NCBI RefSeq assembly: GCF_006345805.1
Contig: NW_021824966.1
Location: 1-17,013 of the forward strand
Length of the DNA: 17,013 bases
Reading direction: 5' to 3'
Origin: Octopus sinensis
Lineage: Eukaryota
In this document: in pieces, positions 2,461-16,574 of the stretch
How positions within the stretch are numbered: position 1 is the first letter of the stretch
Layout: each line of letters opens with the position of its first letter
Translations under genes and position numbers: made by a program
The notes under the pieces: model-generated
The model's input: only the letters and a program-made list of their open reading frames with translations
The model's database searches: none
What the model was told of the DNA's origin: nothing

Positions 2461-3421
2461 ACCTTAAGCCATTAAGTCCCACTGTCCTATAAATAGGACA
2501 CTAAATGAGGTCCTATTTATAGGACACCGAGTATTCCCATTTCTACTTGATGTAAAGGAATTTTAGTAATTAATTTTTCATTTTAACCTATTTTCAATCA
2601 TCTGTAAAAAATATTCAGAAACTTAAGTACTCTGAGACTTAATGTGTTAATTAGATTAACTGTAAATCAGTTAACAAATATAAATCATTAATCAATCATT
2701 AGTAAATCAGTTAACGAACATAAGTTATTAGTTAATCAGTAAATATAGATGTAACATTAAATATGAACAGAGACAAAACACATGTTCCCCACCGACAAAT
2801 TCAAGGGAACGAAACACTTGGCCTCACAAAATAACCAATAAAGAAGCAGAAAAGTTATATTCAATCAACAGACATTAAAAGAAAACCAATGAACAGACAT
2901 ACAAGTGCCTTCGTCTATACCAACAAATATAATACGCACCCAATTCGAGATGCTTGAAGGTTGCGTTGATATGAAACACGAGTCGGATATTATGTCTAAA
3001 ATATGCTAAAATATACGGCTCGAGTCATATATTTTTCATTTGGACGTGTTATAAATATTGTCCTGTTATCAATCGTCTTTTGAGGATAAGAGTATAGATG
3101 TGTTGTCCACTAATATTTGTCTATTTTTAATCGTGTGTGATATCGCGTATTGTTGGTAGTCCTTTCTGTAAACATCTTTATTTTTAGTTAAGTGGTAGGA
3201 AAGCGTCATACTTGTAAAGTCAATATAGCAATTAGAGCCGCTATTTGCAAGCTTGTAGGTTGAAATTCTTGTGGCCTCTTATTAACAACACGGTTCTTAA
3301 TTATAGAGATTTGTAGTATACTGTTAATGTCATGGAACAGAACCTGGAAGGTGAACCAGCTGCATAAGAAGGAAATCATGACATTGCAATGTCTTGGAAA
3401 GAAGAATGGTGAACATTATTA

Positions 3422-3463
3422 TCTCTTACTTGCTTCAGTCATTGAACAACGGCCACGCTGGAG
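3422..3463 (-). mobile_element. 3' tail fragment of SINE family B
   Basis: tctcttacttgcttcagtcattgaacaacggccacgctggag matches the family B tail at 6236-6280. Confidence 0.7.
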
Positions 3464-3551
3464 TAGAACTTTGTATTATGTTGAAGTATAGAATTAGATT
3501 TGCAGAGACCAGACGGAAGGCAGGAGTCAGAGATATACTTGAAGAAAAATG

Positions 3552-3784: not shown

Positions 3785-4114
3785 ATATACTTGAAGAAAA
3801 TGTAAAAACAAACAGAAGATAGGCAGGTCCTTTAGCCTTGAGGGAGAACAGTAGAAGGATGGAATGGATTCCATGAAGGGTTCAGCAGAATGGACGACAC
3901 CAATGAGTACCTGAAGACGATGAGGAATGTGTAAGATTGGTTTGGATTAAAATGGTGAAGAACGGGAAAGGTTTGAAGAGGGACGTCCAATTGTGGACAG
4001 CTTATCCAATGGTTTACTCTAATGCATATTGTGTTCTGTTTTATATATTTTGTTTTTGTTTATATGTTCATTTGTTTTAGAATGAATATGCGGTTTATGT
4101 GGTGTTATCTTTAA

Positions 4115-4515
4115 TCTTTTTCTTGTTTCAGTCATTAAACTGCGGCCATGCTGGGGCACCTCCCTGAAGAACTTGAGTTAAACGAATCAACCCCAGTACT
4201 TACCTTTCTAAAACTGGAGCTTAATCGATCTGTCTCTTTGCCGAACCGCTAAGTTACGGGGACGTAGATACACCAGCATCGGTTGTCAAGCGGCGATGGG
4301 GATAAACACAGACACACAGACACACGCAACGACACGCGCGCGCGTATATACACATGACGGCCTTCTTTTTATAATCGGTTTCCGCCTACCAAATCCACTT
4401 GCATGGCTTTTATCAGTCCAAGAATAGTAGATAACTTGCCGAAGGTGCCATGCAGTGGGGTAGAACCCGGAACCTTGTGGTTGGGAAGCCAACTTCTTAC
4501 CACACAACCATGCCT
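4115..4515 (-). mobile_element. tRNA-derived SINE family B (CORE-like, octopus OR-type) with internal CA/TA microsatellite
   Basis: Colinear with 6229-6626. The minus-strand head has A-box-like and B-box-like (ggttccgggttc) motifs. The tail is ...cagcatggccgcag...actgaaacaag. Confidence 0.88.
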
Positions 4516-5852: not shown

Positions 5853-5941
5853 GGTAAACCCTTTCGCACTTTTGAATATATATACTGCTCTACATCTTAG
5901 GGCTTTCTTCTTTCAGATTTATACTTACTTCTTACAATAAC

Positions 5942-5952
5942 GATATATATAT

Positions 5953-6040
<88 letters not shown>

Positions 6041-6170
6041 TTTATGTATGTATGTATGCATGTATGTATATATGTATGTATGCATGTATGTATTACTATA
6101 TATATGTATATATATATATGTATATATGCATATATATACATATATATATACATATATGTATATAAATATT

Positions 6171-6201
<31 letters not shown>

Positions 6202-6228
6202 ATATCTATATATGTATATATCTATATA
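5942..6228. repeat. Compound (TA)n/(TATG)n microsatellite
   Basis: Visible. Confidence 0.95.
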
Positions 6229-6626
6229 TACTCTTTACTCTTTTACTTGTTTCAGTCATTTGACTGCGGCCATGCTGGAGCACCGCCTTTTTAGTCGAGC
6301 AAATCGAGCAAATCGACCCCGGGACTTATTCTTTGTAAGCCCAGTACTTATTCTATTGCCAAACCGCTAAGTGACAGGGACGTAAACACACCAGCATCGG
6401 TTGTCAAACCAGACACACAAACACATACACATACACACACACATTTATATATACATATATACGACAGGCTTCTTTCAGTTTCCGTCTACCAATCCAAATC
6501 CACTCACAAGGCATTGGTCGGTCCGGGCTATAGCAAAGACACTTGCCCAAGATGCCACGCAGTGGGCTGAACCCGGAACCATTGGTTGGTTAGCAAGCTA
6601 CTTACCACACAGCCACTCCTGGCGCC
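6229..6626 (-). mobile_element. SINE family B, near full length
   Basis: Minus strand: ggcgccaggagtggctgtgtggtaag head, ggttccgggttcagccc B-box-like motif, CORE-like catcttgggcaagtgtctt, internal microsatellite, tail ggtgctccagcatggccgcagtcaaatgactgaaacaagtaaaagag. Confidence 0.92.
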
Positions 6627-6697
6627 TATATGTATATATATGCATATATATATATACATAATATACATATATGTATAAATATTATATATATATATAA

Positions 6698-6754
<57 letters not shown>

Positions 6755-6819
6755 AATATACATATATGTATATAAATATTTATATATATAATTAATGTAT
6801 TATATATATATATATATAG

Positions 6820-6861
<42 letters not shown>

Positions 6862-7185: not shown

Positions 7186-7477
7186 ACAAAGGTCATCATT
7201 TTGAGCTGTCTTGTACTTAAACCGCCTACACTTTCTTTCGTCTTTCTTAAGTATAGCTTTGTTAAATCTGACTTCTATTTGGCTAGTTTTATTCAAATAT
7301 GTATGTGGCACGCGCGTATGTGTATGTGTGAATGTATATGTGTGAATGTATATATGTTTATATTTGTGTATAAGTGCGCGTGCCTGGTGTGTGTGGCGAG
7401 ATGCATCTTGGAAGCGTAATAATATTAAATATATTAGGGTAATGCCATCTGTTGGCGAAAAAGTGAGACAGAAAAAG

Positions 7478-7860
7478 TAGAGAGAGAGAGAGAGAGAGAG
7501 TGGGAGTGACCGGTAGAGAACATACATGCATACATACATACATACATACATACATACATACATACATACATACATGCATACATACATACATACGTACATT
7601 CATACATAAATACATCCATATATACATACATACATACGTACATACATATATACATACATACATACATATATACATACATACATATATACATACATACATA
7701 CATATACATATATACATACATACATATATACATACACACATACACATGCATACATACATACATACATACATACATACATACATACATACATACATACATA
7801 CATACATACATACATACATACATACATACATACATACACGCAAGCATATACACATATATA
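7478..7860. repeat. (GA)n followed by long (CATA)n microsatellite
   Basis: GA run at ~7478-7500 and CATA array at ~7521-7840. Confidence 0.95.
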
Positions 7861-8335
7861 AATGCACTCATAAATAGACGCAATTGTAATTAGCAGACAG
7901 TGGAAAGTTAGAGAGAAGGAAAGTGGTCAAAAAGTGTTAGAGAGTGAGACAAAGGGAGAGAAATCGACTGAGAAGAATGAAATGGAAAATTTGTCAGAGA
8001 GTCAAAGGGAGGCGGGCAAAGACGCCGGGAGAAGAAAAGCACAAAAATAGAAAGTCAGAGGCATTGAAGGCGGGAGAGAAAGAATAAAAGAGAAAACAAA
8101 AGGATGAACGCAAAGCATTAGAGAGTGAAGCAGCGTTGGAAATGGGTTGGTCTGTAGTTTGGCAGCAAATAGGATGTCAGATTGTGATGTATGAAAGATG
8201 AAGAAGAAAAGGTGAAAGACAACCATTGGTGGAATCAAGACAGTTGCGTGGGACTGTTGTCGTTAGATTTGCATAACACATTTAGAAATTGGTAAACACA
8301 TTTCCCAGCTTTTGAATGTAATAATTCGTTGTCGG

Positions 8336-8587: not shown

Positions 8588-8891
8588 GTGAAGGCGCGTT
8601 GCGTAGTGGTTAGTGCCTTCGGCTTGCGATCTTCAGATCGCCAGTTCGAATCCCAGCGGCGCGTTGTGTCCTTGAGCAAGGCATTTTATTTCACGTCCAT
8701 TAAGTTAGCAAAAAACTGAGTTGTACCTGTAATTCAAAGAGGCCAACCTTGTCAGATTCTGTGTCAGGCCGAATCCGTCTGAGAACCATGATAATGGCAC
8801 GCGTGTCAGTGGAGTACTCAACCACTTGGACGTTAATTTCATGAGCAGGCTGTTTCGTTGATCGTTGATCGTTGTGGACCGACGGAGTACC
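8588..8891 (+). mobile_element. tRNA-derived SINE family C (subtype 1)
   Basis: Head gtgaaggcgcg..tagtggttag..agttcgaatccc, CORE-like gtgtccttgagcaag, tail ending gaccgacggagt. Colinear with the reverse complement of 9895-10213. Confidence 0.88.
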
Positions 8892-9030: not shown

Positions 9031-9425
9031 GCTACTCCGTCGGTTACAGCGACGAGGGTTCCAGTTGAACCGATCAACGGAACAGCCTGCTCGTGAAATT
9101 AATGTGCAAGTGGCTGAGCACTCCACAGACACGTGTACCCTTATCGTAGTTCTCGGGGAGATTCCGCATGACACAGAGTGTGACAGGGCTGGCCCTTTTC
9201 AAATACAGGTACAACAGAAACAGGAAGAAAGAGTGAGCGAAAGTTGTGGTGAAAGAGTACAGCAGGGTTCGCCACCATCCCCTACCGGAGCCTCATGGAG
9301 CTTTTAGGCGTTTTCGCTCAATAAACACTTACAACACCCGCTCTGGGAATCGAAACCGCGACCCTACGATCGTGATCCTACGACTGCGAGTCCGCCGCTC
9401 TAACCACTGGGCCATTGCTCCTGCA
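9031..9425 (-). mobile_element. SINE family C (subtype 2)
   Basis: Reverse complement is highly similar to 11196-11570. tRNA head with ggtttcgattccc. Tail shared with subtype 1. Confidence 0.92.
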
Positions 9426-9896: not shown

Positions 9897-10213
9897 AGCC
9901 CTACGTCGGTCACGACGACGAAGGTCCCAGCTGATACGATCAACGGAACAGTTTGCTCGTAAAATTAACGTGTAAGTGGCTGAGCACTCCACAGACACGT
10001 GTATCCTTAACGTAGTTCTCAGGGAGATTCAGCGTGATACAGAGTGTGACAAGGCTGGCCCTTTCAAATACAGGTACTACCTCATTTTTGCCAGCTGAAT
10101 GGACTGGAGCAACGTGAAAGAAAGTGTCTTGCTCACAAATCGTCGCCGAGAATTGAACTCCCGATCATACGATCGCGAGCCGAATACCCTAACCACTAAG
10201 CCACGCGCCTTCA
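9895..10213 (-). mobile_element. SINE family C (subtype 1)
   Basis: Minus-strand head gtgaaggcgcgtggcttagtggttagggtattcggc..gagttcaattc, plus the shared family C tail. Confidence 0.92.
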
Positions 10214-10387
10214 CACACACACAACACACACACCACACACACACACATATATAATATATATATATAATATATATATATATAGTATATATATATATATATA
10301 TATGTGGGTGTGTGTGTGTGTGTGGGTGTATATATATATATATATAGATATTATGATATATATATATATGTATATATATATATATTT

Positions 10388-10427
<40 letters not shown>

Positions 10428-10428
10428 T

Positions 10429-10459
<31 letters not shown>

Positions 10460-10525
10460 ATATATATAATATATATATATATATATATAATATATATATA
10501 CGAATATATACATACACACACATAC
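10212..10525. repeat. CA/TA/TG compound microsatellite
   Basis: Visible. Confidence 0.95.
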
Positions 10526-10800: not shown

Positions 10801-11017
10801 TTCTCATTGTATATTTTGCAATAAATATATATTGATATTATCAATTTAAAAAAAAAAAATCACAAAACGGAATTGCAAAACTTATCTCTACTAAATTTTA
10901 TTAAAAATTATGCATTTTTCTGAGTGTTATGAGAATCAAAAAGAGCGCTGGAGCACCAAACTTGAAAATGCATCTTCCTCTCTCGCCTTGTCTTTTATTT
11001 TCCCTCTCTCTTCCCCT
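10801..11017 (+). repeat. Direct repeat copy 1 (~220 bp)
   Basis: Aligns to 11575-11801 at high identity with a few indels. Confidence 0.92.
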
Positions 11018-11195: not shown

Positions 11196-11570
11196 AAATG
11201 GACAGTGGTTGGGGCAGCGGACTCGCGGTCATAGGATCGCGGTTTCGATTCCCAGACCGGGCGTTGTGAGTGTTTATTGAGCGAAAACACCTAAAGCTCC
11301 ACGAGGCTCCGGCAGGGGATGGTGGTGATCCCTGCTGTACTCTTTCACCACAACTTTCTCTCACTCTTTCTTCCTGTTTCTGTTGTACCTGTATTTGAAA
11401 GGGGCCAGCCCTGTCACACTCTGTGTCATGCGGAATCTCCCCAAGAACTACGATAAGGGTACACGTGTCTGTGGAGTGCTCAGCCACTTACACGTTAATT
11501 TCACGAGCAGGCTGTTCCGTTGATTCGGATCAACCGGAACCCTTGTCGTCGTAACCGACGGAGTGCTTCC
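11196..11570 (+). mobile_element. SINE family C (subtype 2)
   Basis: Head cagtggttggggcagcggactcgc..ggtttcgattccc, tail ending gtaaccgacggagtgc. Reverse complement of 9031-9425. Confidence 0.92.
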
Positions 11571-11574
11571 AGTG

Positions 11575-11801
11575 TTCTCATTGTATATTTTGCAATAAAT
11601 ACATATTAATATCAGTTTTTAATAATTTTATCAACAAAACGAAATTGACTCCATTGCAAAACTTATTTCTACAAAATTTTATTAAAAATTATGAATTTTT
11701 CTGAGTGTTATGAGAATCAAAATAAGCGCTGGAGCACCAAACTTGAAAATGCATCTTTCTCTCTCGCCTTGTCCTTTATTTTCTCTCTCTCTCTCTCCCC
11801 T
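11575..11801 (+). repeat. Direct repeat copy 2 (~225 bp)
   Basis: Aligns to 10801-11017 and begins 4 nt after the SINE 3' end. Confidence 0.92.
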
Positions 11802-11955
11802 CTCTCTTACCCTCTCACCCTCTTACCCTCTGTCTTTCTTTGTTCTTTTTTGTTTTTAGTTATTTAAATTCTTTCTCTGTAGAAGGAGCTGGTTTCTAAC
11901 AAAGATACAAATCACTATCGCTGGAATGTAAATGACGAAAACTGTCACATTTTAA

Positions 11956-12419
11956 CGCACATTTTAACGAATATGGCTAACCCTTATGGGTTAGCCATAT
12001 TCAAATGGCAAATATGCGTCACGATGTGTTACCGCTACTGTTTATAACTCGCTCTGAAATTTATCATTGTTTGATTTCACTTTTTCAATATCAGTGTCAA
12101 TTGACACTGGAAAAAGTATATGTATTTGTGAAGGGAGCTGACTTCTTGTCGACAACCATGATTGTCACACGCTGATGAAAGGTAAACACCTTGAAACTCG
12201 GGTACGCGTGTATCATGAGTTGAAGACGGGGAGGATGACTCCCCTTCACAAATACTGAGAGGACACAGATAGTGTGTCTATAGCCAGCTGGAGGAGATAT
12301 CTTCCTGGGGCTACAAACTACAGTAGCATCCACCCTTATGGGTTAGCCATATTCAAATGGCAAATATGCGTCACGATGTGTTACCGCTACTGTTTATAAC
12401 TCGCTCTGAGATTTATCAT
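11956..12419 (+). mobile_element. Retrozyme-like non-autonomous element (R-U-R, 352-nt period) flanked by 13-bp TSD-like repeats
   Basis: R copies at 11980-12070 and 12332-12422 (91 bp, one a/g mismatch at 12058/12410). tgtcacattttaa at 11943-11955 and 12420-12432. Hammerhead core inside U. Confidence 0.75.
12122..12255 (+). ncRNA. Type I hammerhead ribozyme with long extended helix I
   Basis: cacacg-CTGATGA(12172-12178)-aaggt/aaac/acctt-GAAA(12193-12196)-CTCGG-GTA(12202-12204)-cgcgtg. Predicted cleavage is after A12204. Helix I continues via catgat/atcatg, caac/gttg, gtc/gac and gtatttgtgaaggg/cccttcacaaatac. Confidence 0.88.
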
Positions 12420-12782
12420 TGTCACATTTTAAATTTGAGAAAAATCTTGAATATTTTTACTGTTCCAGATTCTATTTTTAATGTGTGTGTCAGTTGCCTG
12501 ATTTCTTTTTCCGAGTATCCTAGCACTCTCAGTTAGGCGTTTACTCACAAAGCCAAATGTAGCAATTATTATTGGTATAAATGTAAATTTATAACTTGGG
12601 TATACAAGCAGGAGGTTTCCAAGCAGTTGTCCATAGTTATCCTCTTTCTGTTTGATTTTCAGAGGTATTCACCTCAGCAGGAGAGCGGACTTCTATGACG
12701 GTACATAATTTTACTTGTCAGTCCCAAACAACAATATCCGTGTTATGCTTACACTTGATGGATGTTTTGATGTATGTAAGTA

Positions 12783-12830
12783 TTCCTTTATTTGTTTTAG
12801 TCATTTGACTGTGGCCATGCAGGAGCACCG
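12783..12830 (-). mobile_element. 3' tail fragment of SINE family B
   Basis: tttgttttagtcatttgactgtggccatgcaggagcaccg matches 6245-6284. Confidence 0.75.
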
Positions 12831-13281
12831 AAGCCATCTTTCCAACTGCTATCTTCACCAAGACCAGACCGCTTATCCTGTCTCTCTCATAAGCTATCTC
12901 CTCAAACGTTCAGAATAATTTTTCCATCGTCTTGGCTTAACAGCCCTCATCGATTGTTTTTACTGTGTTATTCTCAATAGGTGGTTCATCAACTTTTAGA
13001 GATTATATTATGTCAACTTTATTTATTTACTAAACTGACAATTACAAGAATATACATACATGTAAAACATATTATGCTTTACATATAAAATATATAAAGA
13101 TACCAGTAATTATTAAAATATAACATACGGGAATATAAATTGGAACAATAACTTACAGCTGTTTCAGCCAAGAGGCAAAAATACCTCATTCTACCTTTAT
13201 TCCTCTAGCAGACTGAAGTAATTAGTAGATGAAATTGAGGTACTGGGTGTTTCTCTAGGCTTTGACAGAGTACCTCAATTT

Positions 13282-13821
13282 GGTTTCTCGCTCAACTGCG
13301 CTCCACATATAAAATTGACGGCGGTTGCAGTCTGGGAAGTTAGGCGGCCATATTTTAGGAGTGATGTGGTCGTAAAAATTGTCTGACAGCCATGACTGGG
13401 TTCTCCTGCTTGTGTGGCATGGTGCAGAGTCCTGTTGCCAGACGTAAGGTCTTCCAGCAGTCTCCTTCTTGGCCAGGACAGCACTACCTCCTTCCAGGCA
13501 CTTGAAGTAAGTCTCCGGACTGAGTCTGAGGCTGCGGGGGAAGATGAATGAAGGCATAACGTCGCCATCACTAGTGATCAAGGCCAAACACCATGATGTT
13601 GACTGGATGTTTGTATTGGAGCTTCCGGCGCGAATGCCAAGCAGCACAGCATGTCGTTTCCAAAGTTTCTTACAGAGTGAATTGTGCTATGGTGCTGTTT
13701 TTCTTACAGACGATGCCCAACTGATCCTACTATACTGTGTAGTCCAGAAAATCAAAAATAAACAATGGGCATATGCGAAATTAAAAATATAAAATGGCGA
13801 CAATTTACCCATCGCTCCCTG
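13282..13821 (-). mobile_element. Internally deleted Tc1/mariner of DD37D (maT)-like type
   Basis: Terminus CAGGGAGCGATGGGTAAATTGTCGCC (from 13821), then N-terminal WKRHAV.GIRAGSSN joined directly to KHPVNIMVFG/ITSDGDVMP and GRPYVWQQDSAPCH..WPPNFPDCN. The 37-residue spacing places the third Asp at a now-mutated codon. No right TIR is seen. Confidence 0.85.
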
Positions 13822-14419: not shown

Positions 14420-14523
14420 AGACGGAACGAATGCCGCAATGTACAGTAACTGATGCTCCAACGATTATTCTGGCTTCTATAGACAAATATCAGGCAATGC
14501 CTTTGTCTTGACAAACATATTGA
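14420..14523 (+). repeat. 104-bp direct repeat copy 1
   Basis: Ungapped match to 15413-15516 with 10 mismatches. Confidence 0.93.
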
Positions 14524-14739
14524 TTTCAAATTTTGGCACTAGTCTGGCGATTTCGGAGAAGGGGGTGACGTCGAGTATATGAACTCCGGTATTTAACTGG
14601 TACTTATCTTATCGACCCCGAGGGGATAAAAGGCAAATTCGACTTCGGCGGAATTTGAACTCAGAACGTTTAAGACGGACGATGTGCCGCTTAGCATTTT
14701 GCCCAGCGTGCTAACGATTCTGCCAGTTCCCCACCTTAC
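14517..14739 (-). mobile_element. SINE family A variant (alternative tail), tandem copy 1
   Basis: Same head and core as family A (ggaatttgaactcagaacg, tatcgacccc, ctggtacttat). Tail is gtgccaaaatttgaaatcaatat. Confidence 0.85.
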
Positions 14740-14948
14740 GCCGCCTTACGCGCTACTACTCGCTTGCGCCGCCTTGGCCACCTTACCACCTTACAAACCC
14801 CGCCTTACGCCGCCTTACACCGCCTTACACCGCCTTGCGCCGCCTTGCACCGCCTTGCGCCGCCTTGCGCCGCCTTGCGCCGCCTTACACCGCCTTACGC
14901 CGCCTTACGCCGCCTTACGCCGCTTTAGGCCGCCTTGCGCTGCCTTAC
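14731..14948. repeat. GC-rich 10-bp minisatellite (cgccttRcRc)n, ~20 units
   Basis: Visible array. The unit equals the reverse complement of the SINE A 5' terminus (aaggcgg). Confidence 0.93.
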
Positions 14949-14949
14949 T

Positions 14950-15180
14950 AATATTGATTTCAAATTTTGGCACAAGGCCAGCAATTTTGGGGGAGGAGGT
15001 TAAGTCAATTACATCGACCCCAGTGTTCAATAGGTACTTATTTTATTGACCCCGACTCGATGAAAAGCAAAGTCGATTTCAGCGGATTTTGTACTCAGAA
15101 CGTAAAGATGGACGATATGCAGCCAAGCATTTCGTTCGGTTTGCTAATGATTCTGCCAGATCGCCGCCATCCCCGCCTTA
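14950..15180 (-). mobile_element. SINE family A variant, tandem copy 2
   Basis: Colinear with copies 1 and 3. Confidence 0.85.
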
Positions 15181-15192
15181 AATATTTAAAAT

Positions 15193-15412
15193 ACTGGCTT
15201 CAAATTTTGGCACAAGGCTTGAAGTTCAGAAGTGGGGGTAAGTCAATTACATCGACTCTTGTGCTCATCTGGTACCCATTATTTTATCGACCCCGAAAGT
15301 ATCAAAGGCAAAGAAGTCCTCCACGGAATTCGAACTCAGAACGTAAGGACGGACGAAATGTAGGCAAGCATTTTGTCCAGCATGTTATCGATTTCTGTCA
15401 GCTTGCCGCCTT
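15193..15412 (-). mobile_element. SINE family A variant, tandem copy 3
   Basis: Colinear with copies 1 and 2. The head abuts direct repeat copy 2. Confidence 0.85.
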
Positions 15413-15516
15413 AGATGGAACGAACACCGCAATGTACAGTAACTGATGCTCCAACGATTATTCTAGTTTCTATAGACAAATATCAAGCAGCGCCTTTGTC
15501 TTAACAAATATATTGA
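15413..15516 (+). repeat. 104-bp direct repeat copy 2
   Basis: Matches 14420-14523. Confidence 0.93.
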
Positions 15517-16574
15517 CCGCAAAACGTGTACAGAGCATTTTATCACACGATTTTGCCAATTGGTTTTCTGTTTAAAATATCGGAGCCATTAATTAAAGTC
15601 ATCTTAATTCAATATTGTGGGAGGAAAGCAACGATTAATTTAATATATTGCAAATGTCTGAAATATATCTCAGATCTTGTATTGTTTGTTATTTTTATTT
15701 CTATAGACTTTCTAAGAACAAGTTGGGTAGGACGCGAATATCATTAAAAAAAAAAAAGGAACACCATGCTAAGTTTCTTGTAAGCTTCCAGTTATTTGCT
15801 TCGTTGTCTAACATTGGAAGCTCGAATCCGCCGGTATGGACTTCAATTTTCATCTATCTGGGAACGGCAAATTAGAATTAACAATCAAATACCAGGGTAG
15901 GCTGGTTCTATTCTATCTTCATCAGAGACAAAACATTACAACTAATGCAGTCCCAAGATTATGTGTGTGTGTACTTTATTTGTGAGTTAATATGCTTTCA
16001 TGTAGAGAGAAACCAAGCCTGCCATATGGGAACGTTGGTACTCGTTTCCATCTTGGATGATTAGGGTATATATATATATGTATCTACGTATAAACTGAAG
16101 TCAGAAGAGTTTTATAAGCTATCGGGGGAACGTGAAATAATTCCTCTTCGGAATAGTATAACTCGAAGGACACGCATAATGCTATATACAATGGCATGTA
16201 AATATTGGGCCGAGAAACCCCTTTTGGATAGAAAAAAATTCAAGGCTTTTTCTATAAAAAAAAATACAAACATCAAACAAAAACACAAAAGAAGCAAATT
16301 CACGTCCCCTGTAGGCATGACAGGCTTTCTACCATTGAATCAAAGCAATTCTTCGAATTCCTCTATCAATTTTATAAACTTTACTCTTGCTTATGAGAAT
16401 TCTATGACGCCAACAACATACAATGCTGTGTGTACTTCGAGATATACTATTCCAAAGAAGAATTATTTCACCTTGTCTCGATAGTTTATAAAATTCTTCT
16501 CAAGTCAACAACAAAGAATTCTCACCGGTAAAAATGAAGTTTCTAAAACTGATAACAAATACCTTCGTCAGATT

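What the first reader, a model, noticed from the sequence alone, without database searches (positions are those of the whole stretch)
11943..12432. Young retrozyme-like insertion: ~1.26 turns of a 352-nt hammerhead-bearing (circular?) RNA between 13-bp TSDs
Seen: architecture TSD-[junction]-R-U-R-TSD. R is 91 bp (11980-12070, 12332-12422; 1 mismatch, so recent), the period is 352 nt, the TSD-like sequence is tgtcacattttaa (11943-11955, 12420-12432), and U holds one intact hammerhead core. There is no ORF or tRNA head. Established: metazoan non-LTR retrozymes are short non-coding hammerhead units of a few hundred nt that yield circular RNAs and are thought to be mobilised by autonomous retroelements such as Penelope-like elements. 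Inference: the ribozyme lies outside the terminal redundancy, unlike plant LTR retrozymes, so the redundancy is best explained by reverse transcriptase running past its start point on a circular or multimeric 352-nt template. This may be an undescribed cephalopod retrozyme/circRNA family.
Basis: partly seen in the sequence, partly recalled or inferred. Interest (0 to 1): 0.92.

Follow-up and report, generated by a model that had tools for sequence, protein, structure and literature searches.

The report
Solo hammerhead retrozyme insertion, octopus-like genome
This is a real, recent retro-insertion of about 1.26 turns of a 352-nt non-coding, highly structured, hammerhead-ribozyme-bearing repeat, and it fits a kind already described in other animals (non-LTR retrozymes, dependent on Penelope-like elements), so it is a tidy example, not a new kind.

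Summary
Two 91-nt copies (11980-12070, 12332-12422) differ at one base and lie 352 nt apart. An exact 13-nt direct repeat (11943-11955, 12420-12432) brackets the whole. There is no tRNA, and no ORF longer than 81 codons even in a multimer.

Rfam finds no hammerhead. However, a strict type I descriptor hits only at 12172 (about 0.003 expected per window). A covariance model built from four experimentally validated retrozyme hammerheads also gives one significant full-length hit, 12166-12210 (20.2 bits, E about 5e-4). Caveats are a C·A mismatch in helix I, A-U at 10.1-11.1, and a more stable shifted helix I.

As a circle the unit folds far better than shuffles (z about -7).

The 3' junction is clean, with 3 nt of microhomology. 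The 5' junction carries a repeated target 12-mer and an 11-nt snap-back copy. This fits target-primed reverse transcription of a template longer than one unit. Whether that template was a circle or a multimeric transcript cannot be told: both models are published.

With a single ribozyme, this locus cannot release a circle. No second copy could be found with the available collections, so the existence of a family and of a circRNA remains untested.

Verdict: a new member of a known kind, of moderate interest.

The parts
11943..11955 (+). Left target-site duplication, tgtcacattttaa
   Evidence: Exact 13-nt direct repeat of 12420-12432. Chance about 1.5e-5. The context is AT-rich.
11956..11968 (+). 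5' junction filler, first part: cg followed by most of a second copy of the target-derived 12-mer cacattttaacg (that copy is 11958-11969)
   Evidence: A 12-nt tandem repeat, 2.0 exact copies, spans 11946-11969. The first copy lies mostly in the left TSD.
11969..11979 (+). 5' junction filler, second part: gaatatggcta, an inverted copy of R nt 13-23 (11992-12002). I read it as cDNA snap-back at the ACCC/GGGU mini-hairpin.
   Evidence: Perfect 15-bp inverted repeat 11969-11983 / 11988-12002 with loop ttat (I3). As RNA it folds at -26.7 kcal/mol, z -10. These 11 nt are absent upstream of R2, where 12321-12331 reads cagtagcatcc.
11980..12070 (+). R1, the 5'-truncated upstream partial unit (unit positions 1-91). 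It is the equivalent of a pseudo-LTR.
   Evidence: 91 nt with one mismatch to R2.
12071..12331 (+). U, the remainder of the 352-nt unit. It contains the rod domain and the only hammerhead.
12122..12255 (+). Long imperfect rod (about 42 bp) that extends hammerhead helix I, with the ribozyme at its tip
   Evidence: A 14-nt perfect inverted repeat 12122-12135 / 12242-12255 (I4). The 138-nt fold is -59.6 kcal/mol, z -6.5. Helix list.
12166..12210 (+). Type I hammerhead ribozyme motif. Predicted self-cleavage is between A12204 and C12205.
   Evidence: It is the only hit of a strict descriptor in the window, with about 0.003 expected. It is the only significant hit of covariance model R1, built from four validated retrozyme hammerheads: 20.2 bits, E 4.7e-4, full length, next best E 0.9. 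Nothing scored at or above 13 bits in 49 kb of control loci. Rfam was negative.
12320..12393 (+). 74-nt cloverleaf-shaped predicted domain (an 8-bp stem closing three hairpins) spanning the unit junction. The insert's 5' end falls at the base of its first hairpin.
   Evidence: Present in the circular MFE. Folded alone it is -23.6 kcal/mol, z -3.2. ARAGORN does not call it a tRNA.
12332..12422 (+). R2, the start of the second turn of the unit. The insert's 3' end (RT start point) is at ...tttatcattgt.
   Evidence: Its last 3 nt (tgt) are shared with the TSD, giving microhomology at the priming junction.
12420..12432 (+). Right target-site duplication, tgtcacattttaa

Best explanation
The stretch 11956-12422 is a solo daughter copy of a short non-autonomous, non-coding retroelement of the metazoan 'non-LTR retrozyme' kind: a 352-nt unit with one type I hammerhead, thought to depend on Penelope-like elements.

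Shown:
- An exact 13-nt target-site duplication brackets 1.26 head-to-tail turns of the unit.
- The sense strand of the hammerhead is the strand whose 3' end meets the clean junction.
- The unit has no ORF, tRNA head, B box, poly(A), or match to the tRNA-Met primer-binding sequence tested.
- Its RNA is exceptionally self-paired, with the ribozyme at the tip of a long rod.

Inferred mechanism:
1. An endonuclease made a cut staggered by 13 nt in AT-rich DNA.
2. The bottom-strand 3' end primed reverse transcription inside the RNA at ...CAUUGU, using 3 nt of microhomology.
3. The reverse transcriptase copied 443 nt, passing its own start point and crossing an uncut or religated ribozyme site.
4. 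The template was therefore either a circular monomer or an unprocessed multimeric transcript.
5. At the ACCC-UUAU-GGGU hairpin the cDNA end snapped back and copied 11 nt of itself.
6. It then picked up a second copy of the target 12-mer before joining, which produced the 24-nt 5' filler.

Consequence: the locus holds a single hammerhead. That ribozyme has only a 2-bp helix III (a type expected to need a second copy to form an 8-bp trans helix III) and an imperfect helix I. The locus therefore cannot release or circularise a unit. It is a product of the family's activity, not a source.
For: - Repeat geometry and TSD.
- Hammerhead: the descriptor hits only here, with about 0.003 expected per window.
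- Covariance model from the coral Amil224, mussel Mg353 and axolotl Ax353/Ax330 ribozymes (sequences from the supplement of PMC7229834): a single full-length hit at 12166-12210, 20.2 bits, E 4.7e-4, with clean control loci.
- The helix III layout GAAAC-NNNN-GUH is the same as in mussel (GCGC) and axolotl (ACGU, GUA triplet).
- The dimer cofold forms the 8-bp trans helix III, ACUCGGGU.
- The circular fold is -122 kcal/mol, z -6.8 to -7.7. Eight window controls gave z +0.5 to -2.7. The mussel retrozyme gave -0.9 and the coral retrozyme -3.4.
- GC is 42%.
- No ORF, no tRNA, no B box in the element, no match to the tRNA-Met primer-binding sequence tested.
- The 5' filler consists of templated pieces.
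- Literature: the defining features of retrozymes and the model of cDNAs longer than one unit (PMC7229834, PMC7761336); partial tandems and inverted 5' pieces as PLE insertion hallmarks (PMC8557442); internal RT initiation and an AT-rich target preference for a PLE (PMC11167929); retrozymes as PLE derivatives and 'monomer' offspring copies (10.64898/2026.07.22.740005).
Against: - Only one copy is in hand. No second copy exists in the window.
- Nothing turned up in the collections I could search, none of which is a collection of animal genomes.
- Rfam's hammerhead models do not score it even at E<=10.
- Helix I has a C·A mismatch (12207/12169). A shifted 6-bp register that sequesters C3 is 6 kcal/mol more stable than the active fold.
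- The 10.1-11.1 pair is A-U rather than the usual G-C.
- No PLE reverse transcriptase or endonuclease is in the window.
- The unit has no sequence similarity to the mussel or axolotl retrozymes, as expected for species-specific families, so the assignment rests on architecture.
- The copy number at this locus depends on the assembly being right.
Confidence: 0.7

Rival explanations
1. Specifically a rolling-circle cDNA. The template was a covalently closed 352-nt circRNA (self-cleaved at 12204/12205 and religated), primed at an arbitrary point by target microhomology. This is a sub-case of the best explanation, and it is the reader's preferred reading.
For: The cleavage site is continuous inside the insert. 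The insert's ends (unit positions 91 and 1) are unrelated to the cleavage site, and the insert is longer than one unit. There are 3 nt of microhomology at the 3' junction. The RNA is very stable and highly self-paired, as expected for a persistent circle. This is the published model (PMC7761336).
Against: Every one of these observations is also produced by an uncleaved multimeric transcript. A PLE protein has been shown in vitro to use unprocessed RNA and to start internally (PMC11167929). Autonomous 3-4 kb PLEs form the same partial tandems with no circle on record (PMC8557442). No RNA data were available here.
Confidence: 0.35
2. PLE-style internal initiation on a linear multimeric transcript read from a genomic tandem array of the unit, with no circle involved. 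The R-U-R form is an ordinary pseudo-LTR of a non-autonomous PLE derivative. This is the other sub-case of the best explanation.
For: PMC11167929 reports RT starting inside the RNA downstream of the hammerhead, on multi-copy unprocessed RNA, at AT-rich targets near ATT. Here the top-strand cut falls at TAA|ATTTG, and the 3' end lies about 215 nt downstream of the ribozyme site. PMC8557442 reports partial tandems plus inverted 5' pieces, and non-autonomous elements with pLTRs. The single R1/R2 mismatch could be a difference between neighbouring units of an array.
Against: No tandem array or PLE was seen. The inverted 5' piece here is an 11-nt fold-back, not a separate inverted copy. The 3' end is not in an AC-rich stem-loop as in the anole element.
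Confidence: 0.35
3. The 443 nt are the 5'-truncated 3' end of a larger autonomous element (a PLE or other retrotransposon) whose terminal region contains a 352-bp internal tandem repeat. On this reading it is not an independent retrozyme family.
For: Hammerheads sit in PLE pLTRs (PMC4209133). Most PLE insertions are heavily 5'-truncated, and some PLEs carry internal tandem repeats (PMC8557442). Retrozyme consensus sequences match PLE termini in Xenopus (10.64898/2026.07.22.740005).
Against: This ribozyme has the 'canonical' retrozyme layout (6-position helix I, 5-bp helix II, 2-bp helix III with a 4-nt loop). It is not the minimal PLE type that lacks a helix III loop (PMC4209133). No RT/EN coding remnant lies nearby.
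Confidence: 0.12
4. The assembly has collapsed a longer tandem array. The true locus holds two or more full units and ribozymes and is an active retrozyme source.
For: A 352-bp period exceeds short-read length, and cycle collapse gives exactly flank-partial-unit-partial-flank. Nothing in the window can exclude this.
Against: R1 and R2 differ at one base and each joins a unique flank, so at least these two copies were resolved. There is no direct evidence of collapse.
Confidence: 0.1
5. This is not a retroelement. It is a local DNA-level duplication, or filler DNA captured at a break, and the hammerhead-like motif and flanking 13-mer arose by chance.
For: Only one copy is known, and Rfam is silent on the ribozyme.
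Against: The joint improbability is high: TSD about 1.5e-5, motif about 7e-5 per element by descriptor, CM E 4.7e-4 per window, and fold z about -7. The asymmetry between a clean 3' junction and a templated-filler 5' junction is typical of target-primed reverse transcription.
Confidence: 0.04

Closest known systems
Metazoan non-LTR retrozymes (Cervera & de la Peña 2020, PMC7229834), e.g. mussel Mg353, axolotl Rtz_353/331, coral Amil224
   Same: - The unit size (352 nt) lies within the 150-450 bp range.
- GC is below 50%.
- There is no ORF, no LTR, no match to the tRNA-Met primer-binding sequence tested, and no purine tract or poly(A) at the 3' end.
- The TSD is longer than 4 bp.
- There is one type I hammerhead per unit, with the same helix III layout (GAAAC-4 nt-GUH).
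- The predicted circle is highly self-paired, with the ribozyme exposed at the end of a rod.
- The insert is longer than one unit, as the published model predicts.
   Different: - Only 1.26 units and a single ribozyme are present. This makes it a 'monomer/solo' copy by the operational definition in 10.64898/2026.07.22.740005, not an 'active' array.
- Helix I carries a C·A mismatch, and 10.1-11.1 is A-U.
- There is no sequence similarity to the mussel or axolotl units.
- The predicted fold is far more stable than the two validated examples I folded (z -7.7 against -0.9 and -3.4).
- Copy number and circRNA expression are unknown.
- I found no cephalopod example in the searchable literature.
Penelope-like element insertions and their non-autonomous derivatives (pseudo-LTR partial tandems, PMC8557442; MRC1 of Chlamydomonas; anole Poseidon PAc, PMC11167929)
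   Same: - The partial-tandem R-U-R architecture.
- 5' truncation.
- An inverted piece at the 5' end.
- An AT-rich target.
- A 3' end inside the repeating unit, downstream of a hammerhead.
   Different: - There is no RT/GIY-YIG ORF.
- The unit is 352 nt rather than 3-4 kb.
- The ribozyme is the canonical type, not the minimal PLE type.
- The inverted piece is only an 11-nt fold-back.
- No 30-40 nt 'tail' can be recognised from a single copy.
Classical hammerhead-bearing repeats: Schistosoma Sm-alpha, newt satellite 2, cave-cricket pDo500 (named from my own knowledge and from PMC4209133 / PMC7229834)
   Same: Repeats of a few hundred bp carrying type I hammerheads with a short helix III, which work best as dimers.
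   Different: Those are known as abundant tandem or dispersed families with shown transcripts and cleavage. Here there is one copy and no expression data. I found no pol III boxes, which my recollection attributes to Sm-alpha.
Plant LTR retrozymes (PMC4918200)
   Same: A non-autonomous element with a hammerhead, a proposed circRNA intermediate, and direct terminal repeats.
   Different: The plant elements have type III ribozymes inside about 350-bp LTRs, a tRNA-Met PBS, a PPT, 4-bp TSDs and GC above 55%. None of these is present here.

Membership tests
Metazoan non-LTR retrozyme | Type I hammerhead with conserved core (CUGANGA / GAAAY / RUH) and three helices | tested here: met
   A descriptor scan hits only at 12172. 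A CM built from four validated retrozyme ribozymes gives 20.2 bits, E 4.7e-4, full length. Caveats: a C·A mismatch in helix I, A-U at 10.1-11.1, and a negative Rfam result.
Metazoan non-LTR retrozyme | Organised as a head-to-tail tandem with a ribozyme in each of at least two consecutive units (operational criterion for 'active' in 10.64898/2026.07.22.740005) | tested here: not met
   The locus has 1.26 units and one ribozyme. It qualifies only as a 'monomer/solo' derivative of such a family.
Metazoan non-LTR retrozyme | Monomer of 150-450 bp, GC below 50%, no ORF, no LTR/PBS/PPT | tested here: met
   The unit is 352 nt with GC 0.42. The longest stop-free stretch is 81 codons. There is no match to the tRNA-Met primer-binding sequence tested and no tRNA. 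No purine tract or poly(A) is visible at the 3' end in the sequence.
Metazoan non-LTR retrozyme | TSDs, when present, longer than the 4 bp of plant retrozymes | tested here: met
   The TSD is 13 nt and exact.
Metazoan non-LTR retrozyme | Multi-copy family in the host genome | not testable with these tools
   No animal genome collection is searchable. There is no second copy in the window or in 40 kb of fetched animal DNA. Exact-pattern scans of the metagenome, prokaryote and viral collections found nothing related.
Metazoan non-LTR retrozyme | Expressed as a unit-length circular RNA | not testable with these tools
   No RNA data are available. The predicted circle is very stable, which is compatible with this feature but is not evidence of expression.
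Metazoan non-LTR retrozyme | Self-cleavage at the predicted site | not testable with these tools
   Thermodynamics only. The active fold is -10.8 against an MFE of -16.8 kcal/mol, and the dimer forms an 8-bp trans helix III.
Autonomous Penelope-like element | Single ORF with telomerase-like RT and GIY-YIG endonuclease | tested here: not met
   There is no long ORF in the element. None of the window's ORFs of at least 90 aa looks RT- or EN-like on reading the list. I ran no profile scan against RT or GIY-YIG families.
Autonomous Penelope-like element | Partial-tandem insertion forming pseudo-LTRs, 5' truncation, inverted 5' piece | tested here: met
   R-U-R with a 352-nt period and an 11-nt inverted fold-back at the 5' junction. 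This shows it works like a PLE insertion, not that it is a PLE.
Plant LTR retrozyme | Type III hammerhead inside each LTR, tRNA-Met PBS, PPT, 4-bp TSD | tested here: not met
   The ribozyme is type I (open helix I) and lies outside the repeat. There is no match to the tRNA-Met primer-binding sequence tested. The TSD is 13 nt.
tRNA-derived SINE | tRNA-like head with A and B boxes, and an A-rich or LINE-matching tail | tested here: not met
   ARAGORN finds nothing. No B box lies within 11943-12432. The 3' end is ...tttatcattgt. A 74-nt cloverleaf-shaped fold exists but has no tRNA sequence features.

The most novel reading that the evidence does not exclude
This copy is the first sighted member of an undescribed octopod non-LTR retrozyme family with an unusually rigid RNA (fold z about -7). 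Its junctions would preserve a base-resolution footprint of how such elements integrate: internal priming by 3-nt microhomology on a circular template, more than one turn of rolling-circle reverse transcription, and cDNA snap-back at a template hairpin. Such a footprint is something the retrozyme literature proposes but has not documented in what I read.
Probability: 0.3. Interest if true: 0.5.

Novelty: new member of a known kind. Interest (0 to 1): 0.35.

Why it matters
The way animal retrozymes integrate is still a model, not a demonstration. The retrozyme papers I read note that TSDs exist but do not dissect individual junctions. A young copy with an exact TSD, a defined RT start, more than one turn of the unit and a templated 5' filler is therefore a useful specimen.

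Across many copies, the distribution of 3' ends would separate the two published mechanisms. Fixed ends would indicate PLE-type internal initiation. Circularly permuted ends would indicate priming on circles.

It would also extend retrozymes to cephalopods. Genome papers on that group report Rfam hammerhead hits and Penelope elements (PMC6962438, PMC8557442) but have not characterised them.

On its own, this single inert locus has no evident function for the host.

Tried and rejected
1. Rfam at the gathering threshold and at E<=10, on 801-nt and 86-nt slices, gave no hammerhead. I replaced it with a descriptor plus null simulation and a CM built from validated retrozyme ribozymes.
2. I tried using spurious ORFs of the unit as handles to find other copies in the protein collections.
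   - The 78-aa ORF found no word-sharing candidate.
   - The 59-aa ORF is not on record.
   - The exhaustive HMMER scan gave two hits (P0029, P0030). Both are repeat-inflated artefacts of long repetitive proteins.
3. A SINE-derived ORF, tried as a way to sample more host DNA, found nothing.
4. Exact-pattern scans gave nothing related.
   - The metagenome scan gave one hit, L001, which is a chance match in bacterial-looking coding DNA without helices I or III.
   - The prokaryote genome and viral collections gave zero hits.
5. I looked for a paralogous empty site inside the window. The 10801-11017 / 11575-11800 duplication stops before the insertion site.
6. The unit has no homology to the mussel or axolotl retrozymes beyond chance.
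7. I considered that R might be a long host TSD around a 261-bp insert. I rejected this because it leaves the outer 13-nt repeat and the templated filler unexplained.
8. I considered that the 7-nt match between the start of the TSD (TGTCACA) and 12163-12169 in helix I might mean RNA-guided targeting. It is not significant (about 0.02-0.15 by chance, post hoc).
Full report

Yes. The repeat finder and my own comparison show two 91-nt copies, 11980-12070 and 12332-12422. They differ only at 12058 (A) versus 12410 (G), and their starts are 352 nt apart. The 13-mer tgtcacattttaa is exact at 11943-11955 and 12420-12432. In 200,000 shuffles of the upstream 200 nt, the 13-mer recurred within 60 nt of R1 at a rate of 1.5e-5. 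The last three bases of R2 (tgt) are also the first three of the right TSD, so the redundancy is 88-91 nt and the TSD 10-13 nt. ARAGORN finds no tRNA. No B-box-like site lies in the element, and neither does the tRNA-Met primer-binding sequence I searched for. The longest stop-free stretch is 81 codons even in a four-fold concatemer. No other copy of the unit occurs in the 17 kb.

**2. The hammerhead**

Read directly, the motif is as follows.

| Part | Coordinates | Sequence or note |
|---|---|---|
| Helix I, 5' strand | 12166-12171 | CACACG |
| Core | 12172-12178 | CUGAUGA |
| Helix II | 12179-12183 / 12188-12192 | AAGGU / ACCUU, loop AAAC |
| Core | 12193-12195 | GAA |
| Helix III | A12196-U12203, C12197-G12202 | loop UCGG |
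| Cleavage | after A12204 | |
| Helix I, 3' strand | 12205-12210 | CGCGUG |

Rfam reports nothing, either at the gathering threshold over the whole window or at E<=10 on 801-nt and 86-nt slices. I therefore tested the motif in two other ways.

- A strict type I descriptor required the exact CUGAUGA and GAAA boxes, helix II of at least 4 bp, a short helix III, UH, and at least 5 of 6 helix I pairs. It hits the window once, at 12172. In 10 Mb of first-order Markov sequence it hit once, so about 0.003 is expected per window and about 7e-5 per element.
- I took the ribozymes of four experimentally cleaving retrozymes (coral Amil224, mussel Mg353, axolotl Ax353 and Ax330) from the supplement of PMC7229834. 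I aligned them (A1), built a covariance model with the known structure (R1), and searched the window with filters off. There is one significant hit, 12166-12210 on the + strand, covering the full model at 20.2 bits and E 4.7e-4. The next best has E 0.9. In 49 kb of unrelated loci nothing exceeded 12.3 bits.

The architecture matches the validated mollusc and amphibian ribozymes. Mussel has GAAAC-GCGC-GUC, axolotl has GAAAC-ACGU-GUA, and this element has GAAAC-UCGG-GUA.

There are caveats:
- Position 1.3/2.3 of helix I is a C·A mismatch (12207/12169).
- The 10.1-11.1 pair is A-U rather than the usual G-C, which PMC4209133 calls highly conserved.
- A helix I shifted by one position (GCGUGU/ACACGC, which uses C3) makes the MFE 6 kcal/mol better than the active fold (-16.8 against -10.8).
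- Helix III has only 2 bp. PMC4209133 explains that such ribozymes cleave poorly alone and work as dimers. Two copies of this motif do cofold into an 8-bp trans helix III, ACUCGGGU, with two G·U pairs.
- Speculation: the C·A mismatch could be a CpG-to-CpA change in this copy. A G at 12169 would give a perfect 6-bp helix I, with the active fold at -16.2 kcal/mol.

**3. The RNA as a whole**

Folded as a circle, the 352-nt unit has an MFE of -122 kcal/mol. Its z-score is -6.8 against 300 dinucleotide shuffles and -7.7 against 80.

| Sequence | z-score |
|---|---|
| This unit | -6.8 / -7.7 |
| Eight 352-nt control stretches of the window | +0.5 to -2.7 |
| Validated mussel unit | -0.9 |
| Validated coral unit | -3.4 |

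The + strand is 13 kcal/mol more stable than the - strand. The fold has three main domains:
- A rod of about 42 bp (12122-12172 paired with 12206-12255) that prolongs helix I and carries the ribozyme at its tip. The 138-nt hairpin has z -6.5.
- A 15-bp bipartite hairpin at 12079-12117, z -4.8.
- A 74-nt cloverleaf-shaped domain that straddles the unit junction (12320-12393 in the window), z -3.2.

GC content is 42%.

**4. The junctions**

The 3' junction is clean. The unit would continue ...cattgt|ttgatttc, and the insert reads ...cattgt|cacattttaa, with tgt shared. The 5' junction is 24 nt of templated filler in three pieces:
- cg
- a second exact copy of the target-derived 12-mer cacattttaacg (TRF reports period 12 and 2.0 copies over 11946-11969)
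- gaatatggcta, the exact reverse complement of 11992-12002

With R1's ACCC-TTAT-GGGT this makes a perfect 15-bp palindromic hairpin (I3, z -10). Upstream of R2 the unit reads cagtagcatcc instead, so the 11 nt are not part of the unit.

A precise 3' end and a messy 5' end are what target-primed reverse transcription of the hammerhead-sense RNA predicts. I infer that the cDNA 3' end folded back on the ACCC/GGGT mini-hairpin and copied 11 nt of itself.

**5. What the template was**

A monomer released by the ribozyme would end at 12204/12205 and could give at most one unit. This insert is 443 nt, has its ends at unit positions 91 and 1, and crosses the cleavage site uninterrupted. The template was therefore either a religated circle or an uncleaved multimer. 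That much follows from the sequence.

Which of the two it was cannot be decided here. [quoted passage not shown] The PLE literature points the other way:
- Partial tandems (pseudo-LTRs), 5' truncation and an inverted 5' piece are the normal look of PLE insertions, including non-autonomous ones (PMC8557442).
- A purified PLE protein starts reverse transcription inside unprocessed, multi-copy RNA, downstream of the hammerhead, at AT-rich sites (PMC11167929).

[quoted passage not shown] It also describes dispersed 'monomer' copies as non-transposing offspring (10.64898/2026.07.22.740005). This copy fits that description. It has one ribozyme, so it cannot excise a unit, and it fails that paper's criterion for an 'active' retrozyme of at least two consecutive ribozyme-bearing units.

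**6. Where the window comes from**

The window is eukaryotic, with large microsatellites, several SINE-like repeats and a Tc1/mariner fossil. A 20-kb Octopus bimaculoides locus (L002, GCA_001194135.2) was fetched through a mariner-like protein. It shares the window's SINE at 79-89% identity and the mariner at 78%. An octopod origin is therefore plausible but not proven. Cephalopods are reported to carry PLEs (PMC8557442, PMC6962438), and the giant squid genome has 235 Rfam Hammerhead_1 hits (PMC6962438). I found no paper describing cephalopod retrozymes.

**7. Searches for relatives**

All were negative or uninformative. The details are in the tried-and-rejected field. None of the searchable collections is a collection of animal genomes, so these negatives say little about copy number.

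**8. Verdict**

The feature is real and is more than chance. The most likely reading (0.7) is a recent solo insertion of a PLE-dependent, hammerhead-bearing, non-coding 352-nt element, that is, a non-LTR retrozyme derivative. It was made by target-primed reverse transcription of a template longer than one unit.

The evidence for recent insertion is thin: one mismatch in 91 nt plus an exact TSD. If the template was a multimer, that mismatch could predate insertion.

It is a new member of a known kind. Interest is moderate, because the junctions are unusually informative and cephalopod retrozymes appear undescribed. Family status, ribozyme activity and the circRNA are all untested.

Noticed in passing
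window 12420-12426 and 12163-12169: The first 7 nt of the TSD (TGTCACA) also occur inside the unit, in the 5' strand of hammerhead helix I. The junction 12-mer atcattgtcaca matches 12158-12169 (atgattgtcaca) at 11 of 12 positions (D6). The nicked target would pair better there than at the actual 3' end. The chance of such a match is about 0.02-0.15, so it is probably coincidence.
   Followed up: partly
window 9073-9304 and 11293-11524: Two 232-nt copies of a SINE-like repeat lie in inverted orientation, 96% complementary and 2 kb apart. They carry B-box-like GTTTCGATTCC sites at 9346-9356 and 11242-11252. Older copies lie at 8720-8862 and 9901-10064. ARAGORN calls no tRNA in them.
   Followed up: partly
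window 3415-3470, 4108-4163, 6232-6385, 12777-12832: Fragments of an abundant SINE (core ...TTTCAGTCATTTGACTGCGGCCATGCTGGAGCACC...). The same family is present in the Octopus bimaculoides locus L002 at 79-89% identity. This supports an octopod-like origin for the window.
   Followed up: partly
window 12531-13786 (ORF 13255-13647, minus strand): A decayed Tc1/mariner-type transposase remnant. Its best protein relatives are at most 59% identical, and several carry PF13358; one of the hits is an O. bimaculoides 'uncharacterized protein'. Its pieces are rearranged relative to the copy in L002. It begins about 100 bp downstream of the retrozyme insertion.
   Followed up: partly
window 10801-11017 and 11575-11800: A local duplication of about 220 bp, spaced about 775 bp apart and 85-95% identical. 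It ends in a CT-rich microsatellite just upstream of the insertion and does not reach the insertion site.
   Followed up: yes
window 14770-14969: A minisatellite of about 20 copies of a 10-bp unit, CCGCCTTRCR. It is flanked by further dispersed repeats at 14420-15523.
   Followed up: no
window 5890-6260, 6630-6860, 7460-7880, 10210-10520: Large (TA)n, (TATG)n and (CATA)n microsatellite blocks. Those at 5955-6229 and 7500-7876 are mutually complementary over about 275 nt.
   Followed up: no
P0029, P0030: The exhaustive protein scan returned two long, highly repetitive proteins with E-values down to 7e-20. Those values come from summing 23 weak matches to one short repeat (36% identity over 28 aa), not from homology. 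This is a caution for searches made with junk ORFs.
   Followed up: yes
L001 578-603 (metagenome contig Ga0116191_1006390): The only metagenome match to the pattern GCTGATGAAAGGN5CCTTGAAAC lies in ordinary coding-looking DNA, with no helix I or III partners. It is a chance match.
   Followed up: yes
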